Positions 33,706 to 60,444 of a DNA stretch of 64,000 bases are shown here, one piece after another; position 1 is the stretch's first letter; each line of letters begins with the position of its first letter. The stretch covers positions 156,178,001-156,242,000 of the forward strand of contig NC_059427.1 in NCBI RefSeq assembly GCF_021028975.2, read 5' to 3'. The stretch is from Sphaerodactylus townsendi. Lineage: Eukaryota. Both the position numbers and the translations under genes were made by a program. Below the pieces are notes generated by a model. It was not told the origin of the DNA. It saw nothing but the letters and a program-made list of their open reading frames with translations, and did no database searches.

Positions 33706-33920
33706 AAGCAGACGGCAAACGCTCCAGAACCAGCTACACTCGCTATCAAACTCTGGAACTCGAAAAAGAGTTCCATTTTAACAGATATCTCACCCGCCGG
33801 AGGCGCATAGAGATTGCCAACAACCTGTGTTTGAATGAGAGGCAAATCAAAATATGGTTTCAAAACCGGCGGATGAAATGGAAGAAAGATTCCAAAATGA
33901 AAAGCAAAGAAGCCCTCTAG
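33706..33920 (+). CDS. HOXC5: Homeobox protein Hox-C5, exon 2 (homeodomain)
   Basis: Acceptor TTTTCCAG| at 33705/33706. Reads [71 protein letters not shown]. Confidence 0.97.
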
Positions 33921-35215
33921 GTAGAAGTCTGGGACGGGGTGGGGGCGGCGGCGGCGGCGGCGGGGGCAGGGGCAGGGGGTGGGAACCAGGTCGTGTTGAC
34001 AAGAAGTGAGCAACCTATCTTGAGAAAACTTTTTGGGGGGGGGCTTGGGCGAGGAGAGTGGGAAAGGCGGGGGGTGGGGGTGGTCGCGGACTGACCTGAG
34101 CTACTCGCTCTGGCAAATCTATCAGACAAAAGGCGTTTTCTTATTAGTATGCAAAATAAAGCCCCCCCCCTTTTAGCTTCCAGTAGAAGCCACAGTTAAG
34201 CTACTCTGGAGGACTCGTAACAAGCCGCGCTCTCTAACCTCCCGATAGGTGGGAAGGGAGACATGTGTTGGGTCAACTCACAACCCGGTCCAGAGTTGAA
34301 TGGGGGACGTTTGACGGGTCTTCAACATCACCACGAGAAACAGTATTATCATAAGTGTAGGACATGATCCTGGAAGCTGTTAGGAGTTTTGAAGTGAGGA
34401 GGAGAGGAGGGATGGTATCTTCACGACTTTGAGAAAGTCCAAAAGCCTTGGTCCCTAGCACCAGAACTCGGAAGTCGGAGATGCCTCCAGACTTTCCCAT
34501 CCAAGGCCGAGGAGGTTGAAAATTGCCATTCCTGGGCACGCTTGAGATGCGGGTGAGTCCTCCTGGGCTCCATGGAGACTTACTTCCGAGTAAACGTGCC
34601 TGGGACGGAGAAGCGTGCCCTGAGGGCGGCGTGCCCTGAGGGCGAGAGCCCCTGTTTACTTTTGAGGCGCATTGAAAGTTTGCCACATGTGGTTTTCTGG
34701 ATGCACTTAATCTGAAAGGTTGGGGAGGGCGGGGAGGGGGGGCGGTCATGCTCGTAAGAGATGAGTTCCTCGGGACTGGGGTGCGCGTGTGTTTGTATGT
34801 GTGTGTTTCACTTTATTATCTCACCACCACCCCCTTCCTCAGTGACTTATTTTTGTATTATTTGCATATGAAAGAAAAGTGAATGGACAATGAGCAAATC
34901 TGTTTTAGCGTCTCCCCTGGGAGATTTGCGCAAAAATATGAAAGCACTGTTTTGGGAGTGGGCGGGGAAGGGGAGAAGAGCAGTGAAGTCTCTGGACTTA
35001 AATATTCCTGTGTATTTATTTGCTTCGTAATTAATGTGGCTTTGCAAACAAAAAACCCGATATGCTGAATTTTCATACAAATGTACACCTTCTGTTTACA
35101 TGTACGCCATTCTAGCCAGTAATCCCTTTCCTCTCCTCGATGTTGTATTCCATATATTTATTGGTTGTAATTTCATATGTGAAAGACCATGGAACATATA
35201 TATTTTGTCATATTG

Positions 35216-54027: not shown

Positions 54028-56979
54028 CGCCGTCTAAGCAATATTAAAATGCGCCCACTTCTTAAAAAGCCACTTTCAACGAGATTTGAAGAAAATTGAA
54101 TTCCTGGGAGAGGAAGGGAGGGGCGAGTGGGGCCTGGGGGGCCCTTCGGAGAGAAAGAGGAAACTGTTTGCATATATATATATGTTTTCTTCTTTAACAA
54201 ACAGCAAGAATTAGCCTTCAGAGCTTTAAAACGGTGGGATAAATATTTGCAAGATTTTAGCTTCTGGAGAAGCTAAAAAGAAAAATGTGTTCTTCCTATG
54301 TTTGTGTGTGTATGTGTGTGTTACTTCTGGTGACATGCTTTGGTTATTCAAATCGTTTTGCCCCGACTCATTACTTTTCGTGACAACAGATTTAAGGAAA
54401 AATCAATTAAACATTTGCATATTTCTTTGCATAAATTAGACCTGTCTCTTTGCGTGGTGGTGGGGAACCAGGAAAGGGAGAAAGGAGGAAAACGGTTTGG
54501 TTGGCCNNNNNNNNNNNNNNNNNNNNNNNNNNNNNNNNNNNNNNNNNNNNNNNNNNNNNNNNNNNNNNNNNNNNNNNNNNNNNNNNNNNNNNNNNNNNNN
54601 NNNNNNNNNNNNNNNNNNNNNNNNNNNNNNNNNNNNNNNNNNNNNNNTAATGATATTAGCATTGCTATTTGCAGGAAAAATAAACAGCGTTTACTCTCTC
54701 CCTGCCAAAAAAAATAAATCTCTAGTCATCTTACGGTCATCTTGACAGAGAAAGCATACACGTCAACCAATGAAGCCAATGACATTTTAAGCAGGAGTTG
54801 GGGGGAAAGCAGAATTCACAGGGTTTAGGATTCACTGCAAAGTTCCAAGACCTCATCTTCGGACACATTCAAGCTGCACTCTCCTTCCCCACCCTAGTAT
54901 ATTGTATAATTAGTTAACTTGAATGGATTTTTAAAAACGAAATTAATATTCAAAGATACCAGTACTTATAAGGCATAATCACGTGTGGTCTGAAATACTG
55001 GAGGGGCTGCCCGCCCTGTGTGGCGCCCCCGTATTACAGCCATCAACACGGATTGTTTTGTGCGTCCTTGTTGGATGGTTGTGTGTAACCTTAACTGGGA
55101 AACCGTTCACATGGGGGGGGGGGGGGGTTGTATAATCATTATTATTAGTATTATAACTATTATGATTCCTAAAACCTGAAACAGCAAAGCCTCGGTGAAT
55201 ACGTACTTCATTTTTTTTCCCCCTCAAACCAAGATGCACAGATTGCAAATGGCTAGAGGTGTAGGTTACCAAGCGGTCAGTATGGTAATAGCTTTCACAA
55301 TGAATCCGCAGGGACAATGAGCGCTTATTTTTCTTCAGTACTGTCAAGGAGGCGCTTTGTGCTCTGAAATGGTCCTGGAAATGGTAGCCAGATAGATACA
55401 CGTTTGCAACCCGATTCCTGGCTCGGGTAGGAAATAAAGGCCAGAAATATATTTGATGGAAGTGTTATATTTCTCTTTGCTGTTGTCGCTTTGGACGGGG
55501 GGGGGGGGACACTCCCCCCCACATTGTTCTGCTGGTTGGGCTGAGGCCAGTGTGAAAGGGGGGGGAGGGACGCTTTAGAGACAAAAGAGGTCCCCCACCC
55601 ACGATTTTTTTTCACACGTCCTTGGAGTCTTCTTTGATAGAGACAATAAAAGGAAACTTAGGGAAGCAAGTGTTGTTGTTTTTACAAATAAATATTTTGA
55701 TGAAAATAAAACTTTAGAAAAGAGAACATGCGTACATGTGTGTGTGTGCACGCACGCATATATAAATAAACAGCAAAGGAGTAAATTTTAAAAGTTGCTT
55801 GCCTGCAATGAAATTAACAAGGAAGTAGTTAATTTCAGTCCCCTTTGGGGTTGTGTGTGCACATACACAATGAGAGAGAGGAAACTATGATTCAAGATTC
55901 AAAGCCCACTTGATTTCAGAAGTGCTTACTTTCAAGCAAATATGTAGAAGTTCGGTCTCTGAAATCAAGTGAGCATTCCACAGTCTGATCCTAACACATT
56001 TACTCACAAATTGATTCCACTTTCATTCTGAAGTTAGTATGTGTTCCTGAAACTTCATCTGGAGATTGATTGTCAGTGGAGCAACTTCCAAGGAATTAGG
56101 TTCCAAGATGACAAAGCTGTATTCCCTTCCATTCGACGTGTAAAAAAAAATAATAATTCAAGGAGTACTCATCAGCTTGTAGATTAATGGTTGCTAAATA
56201 TTTATCAGGATTGCCCTCATAAGCCAGGAGTTGTTATGCAATAGCAAGCACATCTTTTTCGGAGTAGTTCTGTTTGGATTCAGATGGGACTCCCTGGGAA
56301 ANNNNNNNNNNNNNNNNNNNNNNNNNNNNNNNNNNNNNNNNNNNNNNNNNNNNNNNNNNNNNNNNNNNNNNNNNNNNNNNNNNNNNNNNNNNNNNNNNNN
56401 NNNNNNNNNNNNNNNNNNNNNNNNNNNNNNNNNNNNNNNNNNNNNNNNNNNNNNNNNNNNNNNNNNNNNNNNNNNNNNNNNNNNNNNNNNNNNNNNNNNN
56501 NNNNNNNNNNNNNNNNNNNNNNNNNNNNNNNNNNNNNNNNNNNNNNNNNNNNNNNNNNNNNNNNNNNNNNNNNNNNNNNNNNNNNNNNNNNTTGGAAACT
56601 GGTACTGGGAAATCCTATGAGAAAGGCTGGGGCGAGTTGGGGGAAGGCGGTTAAGGAGGGCCCAGCTGGGACAACTGAACTGCTGAACTCTTTAAGCTGG
56701 TGCAAAAAGCACTATACAAGTAGGAAGCAGTTATAGCGTCAGATAAGGTGCTGGAGATCATAACACTATTATTCTTTCTCTCCCTAGAGAAAGATAGAGT
56801 TCAATGAGAGTGGGGGAGGGAGAAGAAGACCTAGCCTTTCCGCCTGATGACAGATCCATAGCAGCAGTAAGGGTAATCTCAGCCCAGGCAGTTACCGTCG
56901 TGGCCCTTGCAAACTCCCCCTCCCATGAGAACCAGTGAGACATGTGCTTCCCTCAACATCACAAAGGCCAAATTCTCCG

Positions 56980-57062
56980 GTCCTCTATATGTCCCCTGCA
57001 GAATCGAATTCGTGTGCTGTGCCTCAAGCACAGATTCGTCTCTAGGGGAGTATATGGAGGAT
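56980..57062 (+). ncRNA. mir-10c: miR-10 family precursor (HoxC paralogue, miR-10c) with divergent 5p arm
   Basis: Hairpin GTCCTCTATATG-TCCCCTGCAGAATCGAATTCGTG-loop-ACAGATTCGTCTCTAGGGGAGTATATGGAGGAT aligns end to end with miR-10 precursors. It sits at the canonical position, about 2 kb upstream of Hox4. Confidence 0.9.
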
Positions 57063-57417
57063 GCCAGAACCTTGTAAGTCTTCTGCTATCCTTGCAGATG
57101 TTGCAATTAAAGTCATAAATATCTGAAATTGGGGGAGGGGTAGCATTAGTTTATTTTTCTCTTTTCTTTCTGGTTTTTTTAAAAGACCCAAAACTTTTAA
57201 AAGGAAGTACAGATCCAGAGGAGGCGTCTCGTGCTAGATTGAACTAAGGAGTTAAAAAAAGGGGGAAGGCAAAAGGTCCCCCCATAATAAAAATCATAAT
57301 TATTACTCTTCTTGGAAAGAAGGAAGAGCAGGAACCGCAAACGCAAGCTCACACAAGCCTGTGCCAGAGAGAGAGAGAGAGAGAGGGAGAGGGAGAGAGA
57401 GACCTAACCATTTCAAG

Positions 57418-57452: not shown

Positions 57453-58910
57453 CTGTTACAACCAGCCCAGAGCCTCCGACACCGCTGGCACATTTAGTCT
57501 AATAAATAAAACATAAACAGTTAACTTTATGTGGCACTTTTATTGTTATCAAGTAAAATATTGCAATGCCCTGCAAGCTATGATTTTCAACTATAATTGT
57601 TATCAAGCCGTACAAGGGATTAATCCGACTCCCAGCGCCCCATCTTAATGTAAGCGACTGATAAAGCCCTGCTCTGCCATCACCGGAGCTCTTTTAAAAG
57701 GTTTGCCTCTTCTCTTCAGCTTTCTTAACTTACCCAGGGGTCTGTTTATACTGGCATAGGGGGTGGAGTTTGGGGTACTTTGCTCTGGAATGTCTTCTGC
57801 CCACCATCCCTGATTCCACCAGGAAGTGAGATGCTCAGGACGGATGGTACCCACCTCTCCATGAATCTGGGTGCCACGGAGAGTGGAAGGGAATCAGACC
57901 TGCCTCTTGTAGAGAGGAGGGTGGGGGTGGGGAGCCATCTTCCTTTCTTATGTACCTCTCTGCTTTCAAACAGGATTGGGCACCTGCCTGTTCTTCCCGG
58001 GGTGACCAAAGGACAGCAGAACCTCCCATGGATAAAACCAGCCGAGTATTAAAAACAAAAAAGCGACTTGCCTCCCAGTTTAATAACCCCCATCCCAAAT
58101 GGCTAACAGGGGGGTGGACGGTAGTCCTGCCATCTGGCTGGGTAAGGAGCCTCCTGCTTTCCATTCACAACCACATCAGCTCCTCTCTACCAAGCAAGCT
58201 CGCCTTTCCTGCAAAGGTGGATGAGCTTTTTCACACAGATCTCCAAATGACGCCAAGGTGATTTGCATATCCCCTTTCCTTCCCTCCTCCCAGGTAACCT
58301 GTCTCCTTTGTTTCCCCCCTCTAAGCCCCTGGATCACAAAATATTTAGCCGTCTTCCAATGAGGGGGGGGGCATTGTGTGTGATTGTGGGGGGGGGACAG
58401 AACAGTTTTGCAGGCAGTGCCACTGATCGTGGAAGGAGGGAGGCGAGGGGGGAACCTCTCTCTCCCACCAGTTTTTCTTTTAAGGTGAAACCAGCAGAAA
58501 TGGTTTCAAGCCAGCTTGCTTCCCTGGGGCGTCCAAGGATCTTCTTGAGCGGGGATCAGTTCCCTCGTGGATCGCTACAGGCGAGGAGGTCCTGCTGGAT
58601 ACCTGCAAGGGGGTGGGGAGGCTCCTCCTGACCCTGAGTCTCTCCCCTGCCTCTGGTGTCCTTTCATGATGCTGCGCCTTGCTTTTTCTGGAAGGGAAGG
58701 CTCCTAGATCTCTTCCCCCCACCCTCCATCCAGCTTTTTTGGCTCCGAGTTCCAAGGGTGCTCCCAAACCACAACGAGAGCACCCACCCACCCACTGCCT
58801 TTCTCTCTCGCGCACACACACGCGCGCGCGAGCATCACACACACACACACACAAATTGGATACATTTTGAATAAGCTTTTGGTTCCTTATCCGGGGACTC
58901 GCTCGGCGGG

Positions 58911-59031: not shown

Positions 59032-59494
59032 ATGATCATGAGCTCGTATTTGATGGACTCTAACTACATCGATCCGAAATTCCCTCCATGCGAGGAATAT
59101 TCGCAAAATAATTACATCCCCGACCACAGTCCGGAATATTACAGCCGGACCAGAGAGTCCAGTTTCCAGCACCACCACCAGGAGCTGTACCCTCCGCCTC
59201 CTCCTCCGCCGCCGCGACCCGGCTACCCCGAGCGCCAGTACAGCTGCGCCGGCCTCCCCGGGCCCGGGAGCAACCCCCCGGCGCACCCCAGGGGCCATGG
59301 ACCGCCGTCCGGGGGCCACCACCTCCCCGACAAGCCCCCGCAGCTCTGCGACCAAACGGCGCTCTCCAGCGCGGCCGCCTCGCCGGCCCCGGCCCCCCCA
59401 GCCTGCACCCAGCAGACCCCCGAGCATCCCAGCACCACGGCCGCCAAGCAGCCCATCGTCTACCCCTGGATGAAAAAAATCCACGTCAGTACCG
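59032..59494 (+). CDS. HOXC4: Homeobox protein Hox-C4, exon 1
   Basis: Reads MIMSSYLMDSNYIDPKFPPCEEYSQ...KQPIVYPWMKKIHVST. Donor G|GTAGGT at 59494/59495. Joins 60089-60444 to give 272 aa. Confidence 0.96.
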
Positions 59495-59750: not shown

Positions 59751-60088
59751 AAGCTAGTCTGGGCAGCCCCAGCCATGTGGTTCGTTCTGTTATGTATGCG
59801 TGAAACTCCGAAGGCTTTGCGAGGGGGTGCATAAATAATTCAGGCTCTTCCCAAGCCAGGGAAACCCCTTCTTATTAGAAGAGAAAGTCTTGGGTTCTTT
59901 ATAACCCGTTTAGCTGATGACTTCTCTCTCTCTCTCTCTCTCCCTCTTTTTCCCTCCCCCTTTCTCTCGAGCCACTGGAGAGCTCTCTTTCTCTCGTTGT
60001 GCACCTCTCTGTCGCCGCGCCTTCGCCTTTCTCCCTGTATTCATGCGACCCTTTGGGGGTTTTTTTCTCCCTTTCCCCTCCTTCCCAG

Positions 60089-60444
60089 TGAACCCCAATT
60101 ACAATGGAGGCGAGCCCAAACGATCCCGGACTGCCTACACGAGACAGCAGGTCTTGGAACTGGAGAAGGAATTCCACTATAACAGATACCTGACTAGGCG
60201 GCGGCGCATCGAGATCGCCCATTCCTTGTGTCTGTCGGAGAGACAGATCAAGATCTGGTTTCAGAACAGGCGGATGAAGTGGAAAAAAGACCACCGGCTG
60301 CCCAACACCAAAGTGCGGTCGACGGCGCCGGCCAATTCCTCCGGCAGCTCGATCCCGGCTTCTTCCAACCCCGTGGCAGCCAGTGAAGAGCAGTCGCAAA
60401 GCTCATCTCAGGACCAACGGCCAGAGGATATTACAAGGTTATAA
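60089..60444 (+). CDS. HOXC4: Homeobox protein Hox-C4, exon 2 (homeodomain)
   Basis: Acceptor CTTCCCAG| at 60088/60089. Reads [75 protein letters not shown]...EDITRL*. Confidence 0.97.

What the first reader, a model, noticed from the sequence alone, without database searches (positions are those of the whole stretch)
56980..57062. miR-10c with a rewritten 5p seed but a conserved 3p arm: possible new seed or arm switch
Seen: the predicted 5p (56992-57014) is UCCCCUGCAGAAUCGAAUUCGUG. Established: miR-10-5p begins UACCCUGUAG, with seed ACCCUGU across bilaterians. Relative to UACCCUGUAGAAUCGAAUUUGUG there are three changes (A2C, U8C, U20C), two of them in the seed, giving CCCCUGC. The 3p arm (57030-57051, ACAGAUUCGUCUCUAGGGGAGU) keeps the miR-10b-3p-type 5' end. 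The basal stem still pairs (UCCUCUAUAUG with UAUAUGGAGGA), so the hairpin looks maintained. Inference: a Hox-embedded miRNA has either acquired a new target repertoire, shifted to 3p dominance (as in Drosophila miR-10), or begun to decay. GCAGGGG matches occur twice in the HOXC5 3'UTR (33966-33978), though in low-complexity sequence. TGCAGGG, the match for a +1 isomiR, occurs twice in the HOXC6 3'UTR (29048, 29341).
Basis: partly seen in the sequence, partly recalled or inferred. Interest (0 to 1): 0.85.

Follow-up and report, generated by a model that had tools for sequence, protein, structure and literature searches.

The report
Gecko mir-10c with rewritten seeds
The HoxC copy of the ancient microRNA gene mir-10 in the gecko Sphaerodactylus townsendi has lost the seed that eight other tetrapods keep, yet its hairpin has become tighter, probably as a by-product of a local GC-enriching burst that also hit the neighbouring HOXC4 gene.

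Summary
A strong hairpin lies at 56980-57062 (+), about 2 kb upstream of the HOXC4 start codon. By position and alignment it is the orthologue of reptile mir-10c. The window is Sphaerodactylus townsendi.

Eight other tetrapods were fetched: Eublepharis, Lerista, Elgaria, Hemicordylus, a turtle, alligator, eagle and Xenopus. All keep the 5p seed ACCCUGU. Only this gecko has CCCCUGC.

The 3p arm is not untouched. It carries A4G relative to all seven amniote orthologues.

The lineage has nine derived changes in 78 hairpin sites, against none in Eublepharis. Six are AT-to-GC. Two more form a compensatory G-C to C-G swap in the basal stem.

The fold is about 10 kcal/mol more stable than any orthologue. 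Only 0.27% of random placements of the same kinds of change reach that stability. Simple decay is therefore unlikely.

HOXC4 exon 1 shows the same AT-to-GC burst (25 changes against 2; GC3 0.81), which points to a regional GC-biased process.

Duplex-end energies now favour 3p loading. Seed-match counts in the Hox UTRs are at chance.

No reads or small-RNA data could be obtained, so processing and arm use remain untested. I class it as a new variant of a known kind, of moderate interest.

The parts
56980..57062 (+). pri-miRNA stem-loop of the mir-10c (HoxC, Mir-10-P1c-type) orthologue
   Evidence: MFE hairpin of 34 pairs, -44.0 kcal/mol over 56975-57067, z = -6.5. Rfam RF00104 at 35.8 bits over 56985-57058. 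Aligns to hairpins about 2 kb upstream of HOXC4 in 8 other species.
56992..57014 (+). predicted 5p arm; seed CCCCUGC instead of ACCCUGU (derived A2C at 56993, U8C at 56999, U20C at 57011)
   Evidence: Arm ends are inferred from homology, not from small-RNA reads.
57019..57026 (+). apical loop (8 nt); shorter than in the orthologues because the derived 57028 T>G extends the upper stem
   Evidence: reverting 57028 costs 6.1 kcal/mol.
57030..57051 (+). predicted 3p arm; 21 of 22 bases identical to the amniote consensus, derived A4G at 57033 inside its seed (same base as Xenopus mir-10c)
56983..56983 (+). 5' half of a compensatory basal-stem swap (G>C); pairs with 57059
   Evidence: fold_alignment pair 9-86 is GC in 6 sequences and CG in 1; polarised.
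57059..57059 (+). 3' half of the compensatory basal-stem swap (C>G)
59032..59493 (+). HOXC4 exon 1 coding part (MIMSSYLMDSNY ... YPWMKKIHVST); same-strand neighbour 1.97 kb downstream; shares the AT-to-GC burst
   Evidence: ORF; homologues named Hox-C4; 25-27 lineage-specific changes (22-23 W>S) and GC3 0.81.
60088..60444 (+). HOXC4 exon 2 with the homeobox (start approximate)
33855..33920 (+). end of the HOXC5 homeobox exon with its stop codon; upstream same-strand neighbour, 23 kb from the hairpin

Best explanation
This is the true orthologue of reptile and amphibian mir-10c, lying between HOXC5 and HOXC4 on the Hox-coding strand of Sphaerodactylus townsendi. Nine substitutions accumulated in the 83-nt hairpin after the split from eublepharid geckos. 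Most are AT-to-GC, and they are part of a local GC-enriching burst that also rewrote HOXC4 exon 1. The pattern is the one expected from GC-biased gene conversion at a recombination-prone promoter region. A functionally redundant mir-10 paralogue could tolerate such changes (inferred). Pairing stayed under selection throughout: one basal pair was swapped G-C to C-G, mismatches became C-G pairs, and the stem grew to 34 pairs. The locus therefore most likely still serves as a Drosha/Dicer substrate (inferred). Its products no longer carry the miR-10 seed. The 5p reads CCCCUGC, and its 5' end is now locked in a U-A plus four C-G pairs. The 3p 5' end sits next to a bulge, so loading should shift towards the 3p arm, whose seed is CAGAUUC (inferred from energetics, not shown).
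For: Orthology and synteny: HOXC8, C6, C5 and C4 homeoboxes all lie on the + strand. The hairpin lies 1.97 kb upstream of the HOXC4 ATG, as in 8 other species. PMC9498476 places mir-10c in this spacer in lizards.
Lineage specificity: the 5p seed is invariant in Eublepharis, Lerista, Elgaria, Hemicordylus, Natator, Alligator, Aquila and Xenopus. Those hairpins score 52.5-61.3 bits on RF00104, against 35.8 here.
Acceleration: 9 derived changes in 78 sites against 0 in Eublepharis; alignable non-coding flanks show 109 against 120 in 3209 sites (Fisher p = 0.0015-0.0017).
GC bias and regional scope: 6 W>S, 1 S>W and 2 S<>S in the hairpin. HOXC4 exon 1 has 25 changes against 2, with 22 W>S. A codon-wise recount gives 27 against 5, of which 15 are synonymous and 12 non-synonymous; GC3 is 0.81, against 0.71 in Eublepharis and 0.56-0.60 in other squamates.
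Structure kept: -44.0 kcal/mol against -32.8 to -36.2 in orthologues and -34.3 for the parsimony ancestor. Only 0.27% of 3000 random placements of the same number and types of change reach -44.0, and only 11.6% even keep the ancestral stability. There is one compensatory pair.
Arm prediction: the first 4-6 nt of the 5p 5' end pair at -5.2 to -10.1 kcal/mol, against 0 for the 3p 5' end. The ancestor is nearly balanced.
Not an assembly slip (indirect): contigs of a second sample of organism A hold 71% of the 21 sampled 31-mers of 56900-57160, and another species in the same study holds 62%. About 47% of all possible words in that stretch avoid every derived base.
Against: There are no small-RNA or RNA reads, so processing, arm ratio and 5' ends are unknown (one search listed no RNA holder; read laying failed).
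The hairpin's substitution density (11.5%) is about what unconstrained DNA would show on this branch, so primary-sequence constraint was effectively absent.
The next 249 aligned sites downstream have only 7 derived changes. The burst is therefore patchy rather than uniform, which is not what a simple broad conversion hotspot predicts.
GC-biased gene conversion is inferred from the pattern alone; no recombination or polymorphism data were used.
Whether mir-10a and mir-10b are intact in this genome (the assumed redundancy) was not tested.
Arm choice in mir-10 is known not to follow duplex energetics alone (PMC3049427).
U8C and U20C do not improve pairing, so selection for structure does not explain them.
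Confidence: 0.55

Rival explanations
1. Early pseudogenisation. With mir-10a and mir-10b supplying canonical miR-10, the HoxC copy lost constraint and is drifting. The intact stem would then be a by-product of GC-ward change, and the hairpin would no longer be processed usefully.
For: Substitution density in the hairpin (9 of 78) is near the neutral level and far above the flanks. Both seeds are hit. Loss of miR-10 paralogues from duplicated Hox clusters through redundancy is described in PMC3049427. U8C and U20C are neutral or slightly destabilising. The Rfam score is below gathering.
Against: Stability rose by about 10 kcal/mol. Only 0.27% of GC-biased random placements reach it, and 88% of them lose stability. 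A G-C to C-G swap needs selection for pairing. There are no indels, the stem has 34 pairs and the arm geometry is kept.
Confidence: 0.25
2. Adaptive neofunctionalisation. The new 5p seed (CCCCUGC), or the 3p, was driven by positive selection to regulate a new target set, possibly within the Hox clusters.
For: Changes are concentrated in an element otherwise invariant from frog to bird. The rate exceeds that of conserved flanks. The hairpin is maintained.
Against: Seed-match counts are at chance: GCAGGGG 9 against 5.9 expected, P = 0.15; TGCAGGG 7 against 5.9. The HOXC5 pair lies in a low-complexity G-run. The AT-to-GC bias shared with synonymous sites of HOXC4 (15 synonymous W>S) fits a non-adaptive process better. 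The 5p 5' end is now energetically disfavoured for loading.
Confidence: 0.12
3. The hairpin is kept for a role in cis: a Microprocessor cleavage site that trims or destabilises the long HoxC primary transcripts running through it. Under that role only the structure matters, not the mature sequence.
For: Structure is conserved or strengthened while both mature sequences changed freely. In the public annotation the hairpin lies inside the range of a + strand gene model (348 aa, homeodomain plus DUF4074) that spans the whole locus.
Against: No data bear on this. In eight other species the mature sequence is strictly conserved, so the ancestral function was in trans.
Confidence: 0.05
4. An assembly or polishing artefact: the true sequence is canonical.
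For: No read pile-up could be inspected. The assembly used 10X linked reads with ONT gap filling and NextPolish (10.1101/2021.08.13.456260).
Against: Nine substitutions with no indels, including a paired compensatory swap, do not look like polishing errors. The AT-to-GC pattern continues into HOXC4. Independent runs from a second sample and from other species hold 48-71% of the exact 31-mers.
Confidence: 0.03

Closest known systems
mir-10c of reptiles (miRBase aca-, oha-, ami- and cpi-mir-10c; the HoxC paralogue of MIR-10)
   Same: Same genomic slot (HOXC5-HOXC4 spacer, Hox strand, about 2 kb upstream of HOXC4). Same hairpin architecture. It differs from the gecko Eublepharis at 10 of 93 positions across the hairpin span (BLAST gives 89.9% over 99 nt). 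The 3p arm is 21 of 22 bases identical.
   Different: The 5p seed differs at positions 2 and 8, plus position 20. The 3p seed differs at position 4. It scores 35.8 bits on RF00104 against 52.5-61.3 for orthologues. The stem is about 10 kcal/mol more stable, with a shifted pairing register at the 5p 5' end and a 2-nt bulge near the 5p 3' end.
[quoted passage not shown] 2011, PMC3049427)
   Same: A mir-10 locus whose functional output may move from the 5p to the 3p arm, changing targets while the gene persists.
   Different: In flies and beetles the duplex sequence is identical and the switch is encoded outside it. Here the duplex itself changed, and the switch is only predicted from end energetics.
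GC-biased accelerated regions (gBGC-driven bursts in otherwise conserved elements, as argued for many human accelerated regions; from general knowledge)
   Same: Clustered, lineage-specific, AT-to-GC-skewed substitutions in deeply conserved elements, affecting neighbouring coding and non-coding elements alike.
   Different: No recombination or polymorphism evidence here. The affected element is an RNA hairpin in which pairing was simultaneously preserved.
Loss of miR-10 paralogues from duplicated Hox clusters (noted in PMC3049427; no mammalian HoxC locus was examined here)
   Same: The same class of redundant paralogue with relaxed sequence constraint.
   Different: Those copies are gone. This one keeps, and tightens, its hairpin.

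Membership tests
MIR-10 gene family (by descent), HoxC paralogue mir-10c | Location upstream of a Hox4 paralogue, on the Hox-coding strand, between Hox5 and Hox4 | tested here: met
   HOXC5 stop at 33920, hairpin at 56980-57062, HOXC4 ATG at 59032, all on the + strand. Same arrangement in 8 other species.
MIR-10 gene family (by descent), HoxC paralogue mir-10c | Alignable, orthologous hairpin sequence | tested here: met
   81-90% identity over about 100 nt to the hairpins of six reptiles; multiple alignments A1-A4.
Rfam RF00104 mir-10 | Covariance-model score at or above the curated gathering score (47.5 bits) | tested here: not met
   35.8 bits, E = 6.7e-7; no hit in the gathering-threshold scan. 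Orthologues score 52.5-61.3 bits.
miR-10 seed family (functional class) | 5p seed ACCCUGU at positions 2-8 | tested here: not met
   CCCCUGC at 56993-56999. The seed is invariant in 8 other species.
Canonical animal miRNA gene | Stable stem-loop of about 35 bp with a small apical loop | tested here: met
   34 pairs, 8-nt loop, -44.0 kcal/mol; z = -6.5.
Canonical animal miRNA gene | Reads of about 22 nt from both arms with fixed 5' ends and 2-nt overhangs | not testable with these tools
gBGC-accelerated region | Lineage-specific excess of AT-to-GC substitutions over neighbouring elements regardless of function | tested here: met
   Hairpin 6 W>S to 1 S>W. HOXC4 exon 1 22 to 1, and 23 of 27 codon-wise, including 15 synonymous. 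GC3 0.81.
gBGC-accelerated region | Elevated recombination, or a skew of derived GC alleles towards high frequency in population data | not tested
   No polymorphism or recombination data were available.

The most novel reading that the evidence does not exclude
A bilaterian-conserved, Hox-embedded microRNA gene has left its seed family while staying an active miRNA gene. The Sphaerodactylus mir-10c would still be processed and would now deliver a non-miR-10 seed (3p-dominant CAGAUUC and/or 5p CCCCUGC). The push would have come from GC-biased gene conversion, with pairing rescued by compensatory selection. That would be a documented route by which a neutral genomic force creates a new miRNA specificity inside a Hox cluster.
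Probability: 0.3. Interest if true: 0.75.

Novelty: new variant of a known kind. Interest (0 to 1): 0.5.

Why it matters
The seed of miR-10-5p is among the most conserved regulatory sequences in animals. Here it is unchanged from Xenopus to eagle at this very locus. A copy that changes two seed bases yet tightens its hairpin is a natural experiment on three questions: how miRNA genes leave a seed family, whether structure and mature sequence can be selected separately, and whether GC-biased gene conversion can rewrite deeply conserved regulatory RNAs and the adjacent Hox coding sequence. If the arm output has switched, it would be a vertebrate counterpart of the insect mir-10 arm switch. If the hairpin is dead, it is simply one more redundant paralogue on its way out.

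Tried and rejected
No letters of 57480-57564 were sent as a query to any search afterwards; they were masked to N in my local BLAST queries.

2. Papers were searched for the variant 5p string and near-variants, and no paper holds it. 'Mir-10-P1c' returned no hits.

3. I tried to find the hairpin in other sphaerodactylids. Exact look-up of the three ORFs that span the hairpin, and of two HOXC4 ORFs, found nothing in the protein collection. Euleptes HOXC4 has no contig on record. Zootoca and Latimeria look-ups returned nothing. The only Logan contig found (L006) is a non-gecko lizard and starts downstream of the hairpin. A homologue search with the short hairpin-spanning ORFs was considered and dropped as too unlikely to repay its cost.

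4. Paralogous gene conversion from mir-10b was considered. By my recollection of mir-10b, only one of the four arm changes (3p A4G) matches it. Rejected.

5. Target co-evolution in the Hox UTRs was rejected, because counts are at chance.

6. The status of mir-10a and mir-10b in this genome could not be reached. Earlier scan notes had nothing on HoxB or HoxD.

7. L007 turned out to be the same genome as the window (100% identity). It had been part of the local BLAST subject set, before its identity was known.

Only the exon 1 ORF was searched, by reference.

Full report
**What is there.**
- Positions 56992-57014 read TCCCCTGCAGAATCGAATTCGTG, and 57030-57051 read ACAGATTCGTCTCTAGGGGAGT.
- The 106-nt stretch 56970-57075 folds into one long hairpin of -46.8 kcal/mol, z = -6.5, and none of 200 dinucleotide shuffles folds as well.
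- A default Rfam scan of the whole window finds nothing. A permissive scan finds mir-10 (RF00104) at 56985-57058 on the + strand with 35.8 bits and E = 6.7e-7, below the 47.5-bit gathering score.

**Context and identity.**
- Four homeoboxes lie on the + strand, and their sequences identify HOXC8, HOXC6, HOXC5 (stop at 33920) and HOXC4.
- HOXC4 exon 1 begins at 59032 (MIMSSYLMDSNY ... YPWMKK). Its best database relatives are all named Hox-C4.
- The hairpin therefore sits 1.97 kb upstream of the HOXC4 ATG and 23 kb downstream of HOXC5, on the Hox strand. A lizard genome paper places mir-10c in this slot, and cites miRBase entries for anole, alligator, king cobra and turtle (PMC9498476).
- The locus fetched through the S. 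townsendi HOXC4 protein (GCA_021028975.2, CM037616.2) is 100% identical to every unmasked part of the window. The window is therefore Sphaerodactylus townsendi.

**Orthologues.**
- Using HOXC4 proteins as handles, I fetched 10 kb upstream of HOXC4 from eight species: Eublepharis macularius, Elgaria, Hemicordylus, Lerista, the turtle Natator, Alligator, Aquila and Xenopus laevis.
- Each has a mir-10 hairpin about 1.5-2.3 kb upstream of the annotated HOXC4 coding start, scoring 52.5-61.3 bits on RF00104.
- In all eight the 5p seed (positions 2-8) is ACCCUGU. In the six non-avian reptiles the whole 23-nt 5p is identical.
- A published table lists the same canonical 23-mer, with Anolis carolinensis given as the source species of the matching miRBase entry (PMC6053560).
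- The seed change is therefore private to the Sphaerodactylus lineage and arose after its split from eublepharid geckos.
- The 3p arm is not unchanged. All seven amniotes have ACAAAUUCG, while the window has ACAGAUUCG, which is also the Xenopus state.

**How unusual the change is.**
I polarised substitutions with Eublepharis as sister and three other squamates as outgroups.

| Region | Sites | S. townsendi-specific | Eublepharis-specific |
|---|---|---|---|
| Hairpin 56980-57062 | 78 | 9 | 0 |
| Alignable non-coding DNA around it | 3209 | 109 | 120 |

- Fisher p is 0.0017 for the rate and 0.0015 for the asymmetry.
- The nine changes are 56983 G>C, 56985 T>C, 56993 A>C, 56999 T>C, 57011 T>C, 57020 C>T, 57028 T>G, 57033 A>G and 57059 C>G.
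- Six are AT-to-GC, one is GC-to-AT, and two are G<>C.

**A regional cause.**
- HOXC4 exon 1 has 25 S. townsendi-specific changes against 2 in Eublepharis, and 22 of the 25 are AT-to-GC. The part of exon 2 examined has 15 against 8.
- Counted codon by codon, exon 1 has 27 against 5. Of the 27, 15 are synonymous and 12 non-synonymous, and 23 are AT-to-GC.
- GC3 is 0.81 in S. townsendi, 0.71 in Eublepharis, 0.56-0.60 in other squamates and 0.53 in the turtle.
- Conserved non-coding blocks further upstream (50-55.6 kb) show no such asymmetry.
- This is the signature usually ascribed to GC-biased gene conversion. That reading is an inference from pattern only.
- The burst is patchy. The 249 aligned sites just downstream of the hairpin have only 7 derived changes.

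**Structure was kept, not lost.**
- Over the same 92-94-nt span the S. townsendi hairpin folds at -44.0 kcal/mol. The six reptile orthologues folded fold at -32.8 to -36.2, and the parsimony ancestor at -34.3.
- Positions 56983 and 57059 form a pair that is G-C in six species and C-G here, which is a compensatory double change.
- A2C turns a mismatch into a C-G pair, and 57028 T>G extends the upper stem. Reverting either costs 5-6 kcal/mol.
- I placed the same number and kinds of substitution (6 W>S, 1 S>W, 2 S<>S) at random in the ancestral hairpin. The mean was -28.6 ± 4.8 kcal/mol, only 0.27% of 3000 trials reached -44.0, and only 11.6% kept the ancestral stability.
- Plain neutral decay is therefore unlikely, and pairing remained under selection.
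- U8C and U20C do not help pairing. They look like passengers of the GC-ward process.

**Predicted consequence.**
- In the new fold the 5p 5' end is held by a U-A pair followed by four C-G pairs. The 3p 5' end lies next to a 2-nt bulge (C20, G21).
- Mini-duplex energies for the first 4-6 nt are -5.2 to -10.1 kcal/mol at the 5p end against 0 at the 3p end. The ancestor is nearly balanced.
- By the asymmetry rule this favours loading of the 3p arm.
- This is a prediction only. Griffiths-Jones et al. showed that mir-10 arm choice is not set by duplex energetics alone (PMC3049427).
- The public gene table shows a + strand gene model (348 aa, homeodomain plus DUF4074) whose range spans the whole locus. 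The hairpin is therefore probably inside a transcribed unit.

**Targets.**
On the + strand of the window, GCAGGGG occurs 9 times against 5.9 expected (P = 0.15) and TGCAGGG 7 times against 5.9. The two HOXC5 'sites' lie in a GGC/G-rich low-complexity run. There is no evidence of target co-evolution.

**Is it an assembly error?**
- I could not lay reads.
- Indirect evidence comes from the 21 sampled 31-mers of 56900-57160. The best holder, which may be the assembled sample itself, has all of them. A second sample of the same organism has 71%, another species of the same 2021 study has 62%, and a species from a 2025 study has 48%.
- Only about 47% of all possible words in that stretch avoid every derived base. 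The 71% and 62% holders therefore very probably carry some of the derived bases.
- The genome paper describes resequencing of several Sphaerodactylus species (10.1101/2021.08.13.456260). This fits the coded organisms, but the codes were not resolved.
- Nine substitutions without indels, including a paired swap and a pattern that continues into HOXC4, are not what polishing errors look like.

**Verdict.**
- This is a real, orthologous mir-10c whose two seeds were rewritten in one gecko lineage, while the hairpin was preserved and tightened.
- The most likely cause is a local GC-biased substitution burst acting on a redundant paralogue, with compensatory selection for pairing.
- By descent it belongs to the MIR-10 gene family. 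By seed and by the Rfam threshold it no longer does.
- Whether it is processed, and from which arm, is the open question that small-RNA data would settle.
- No paper found here describes the variant.

- N runs were not filled.
- No human contig was met.

Noticed in passing
window 59032-59493 and about 60088-60444 (HOXC4 coding exons): HOXC4 of S. townsendi evolved 4-12 times faster than that of Eublepharis (exon 1: 25-27 changes against 2-5). The changes are almost all AT-to-GC and include 12 amino-acid changes. GC3 is 0.81, against 0.56-0.60 in non-gecko squamates.
   Followed up: partly
L011 8181-8255 (Aquila chrysaetos) and L009 8413-8484 (Xenopus laevis): A canonical mir-10 hairpin lies upstream of HOXC4 in an eagle (60.7 bits) and in a frog (53.3 bits). 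mir-10c is therefore not restricted to non-avian reptiles, as PMC9498476 suggested from miRBase entries.
   Followed up: partly
L009 about 8420 (Xenopus laevis mir-10c 5p): In this X. laevis copy the first base of the 5p is C instead of U, with the seed intact. Its 3p has ACAGAUUCG, like S. townsendi.
   Followed up: no
L007 (same genome as the window), whole locus: The public gene table has a + strand model of 348 aa (homeodomain plus DUF4074) whose range spans HOXC4 and the hairpin. It is probably a HOXC3-type gene with far-upstream exons, which would put the hairpin in an intron.
   Followed up: no
window 56982-57059, minus strand: The reverse complement also matches RF00104 weakly (22.2 bits, E = 0.012), as expected for a near-symmetric hairpin. 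The eagle shows the same (34.5 bits).
   Followed up: no
Neither place was filled or searched.
   Followed up: no
L006 (Logan contig of SRR31946006): An unnamed run holds a HOXC4 exon 1 that is 96-97% identical to Hemicordylus and Lerista, so it comes from a non-gecko lizard. The contig stops short of the hairpin.
   Followed up: partly
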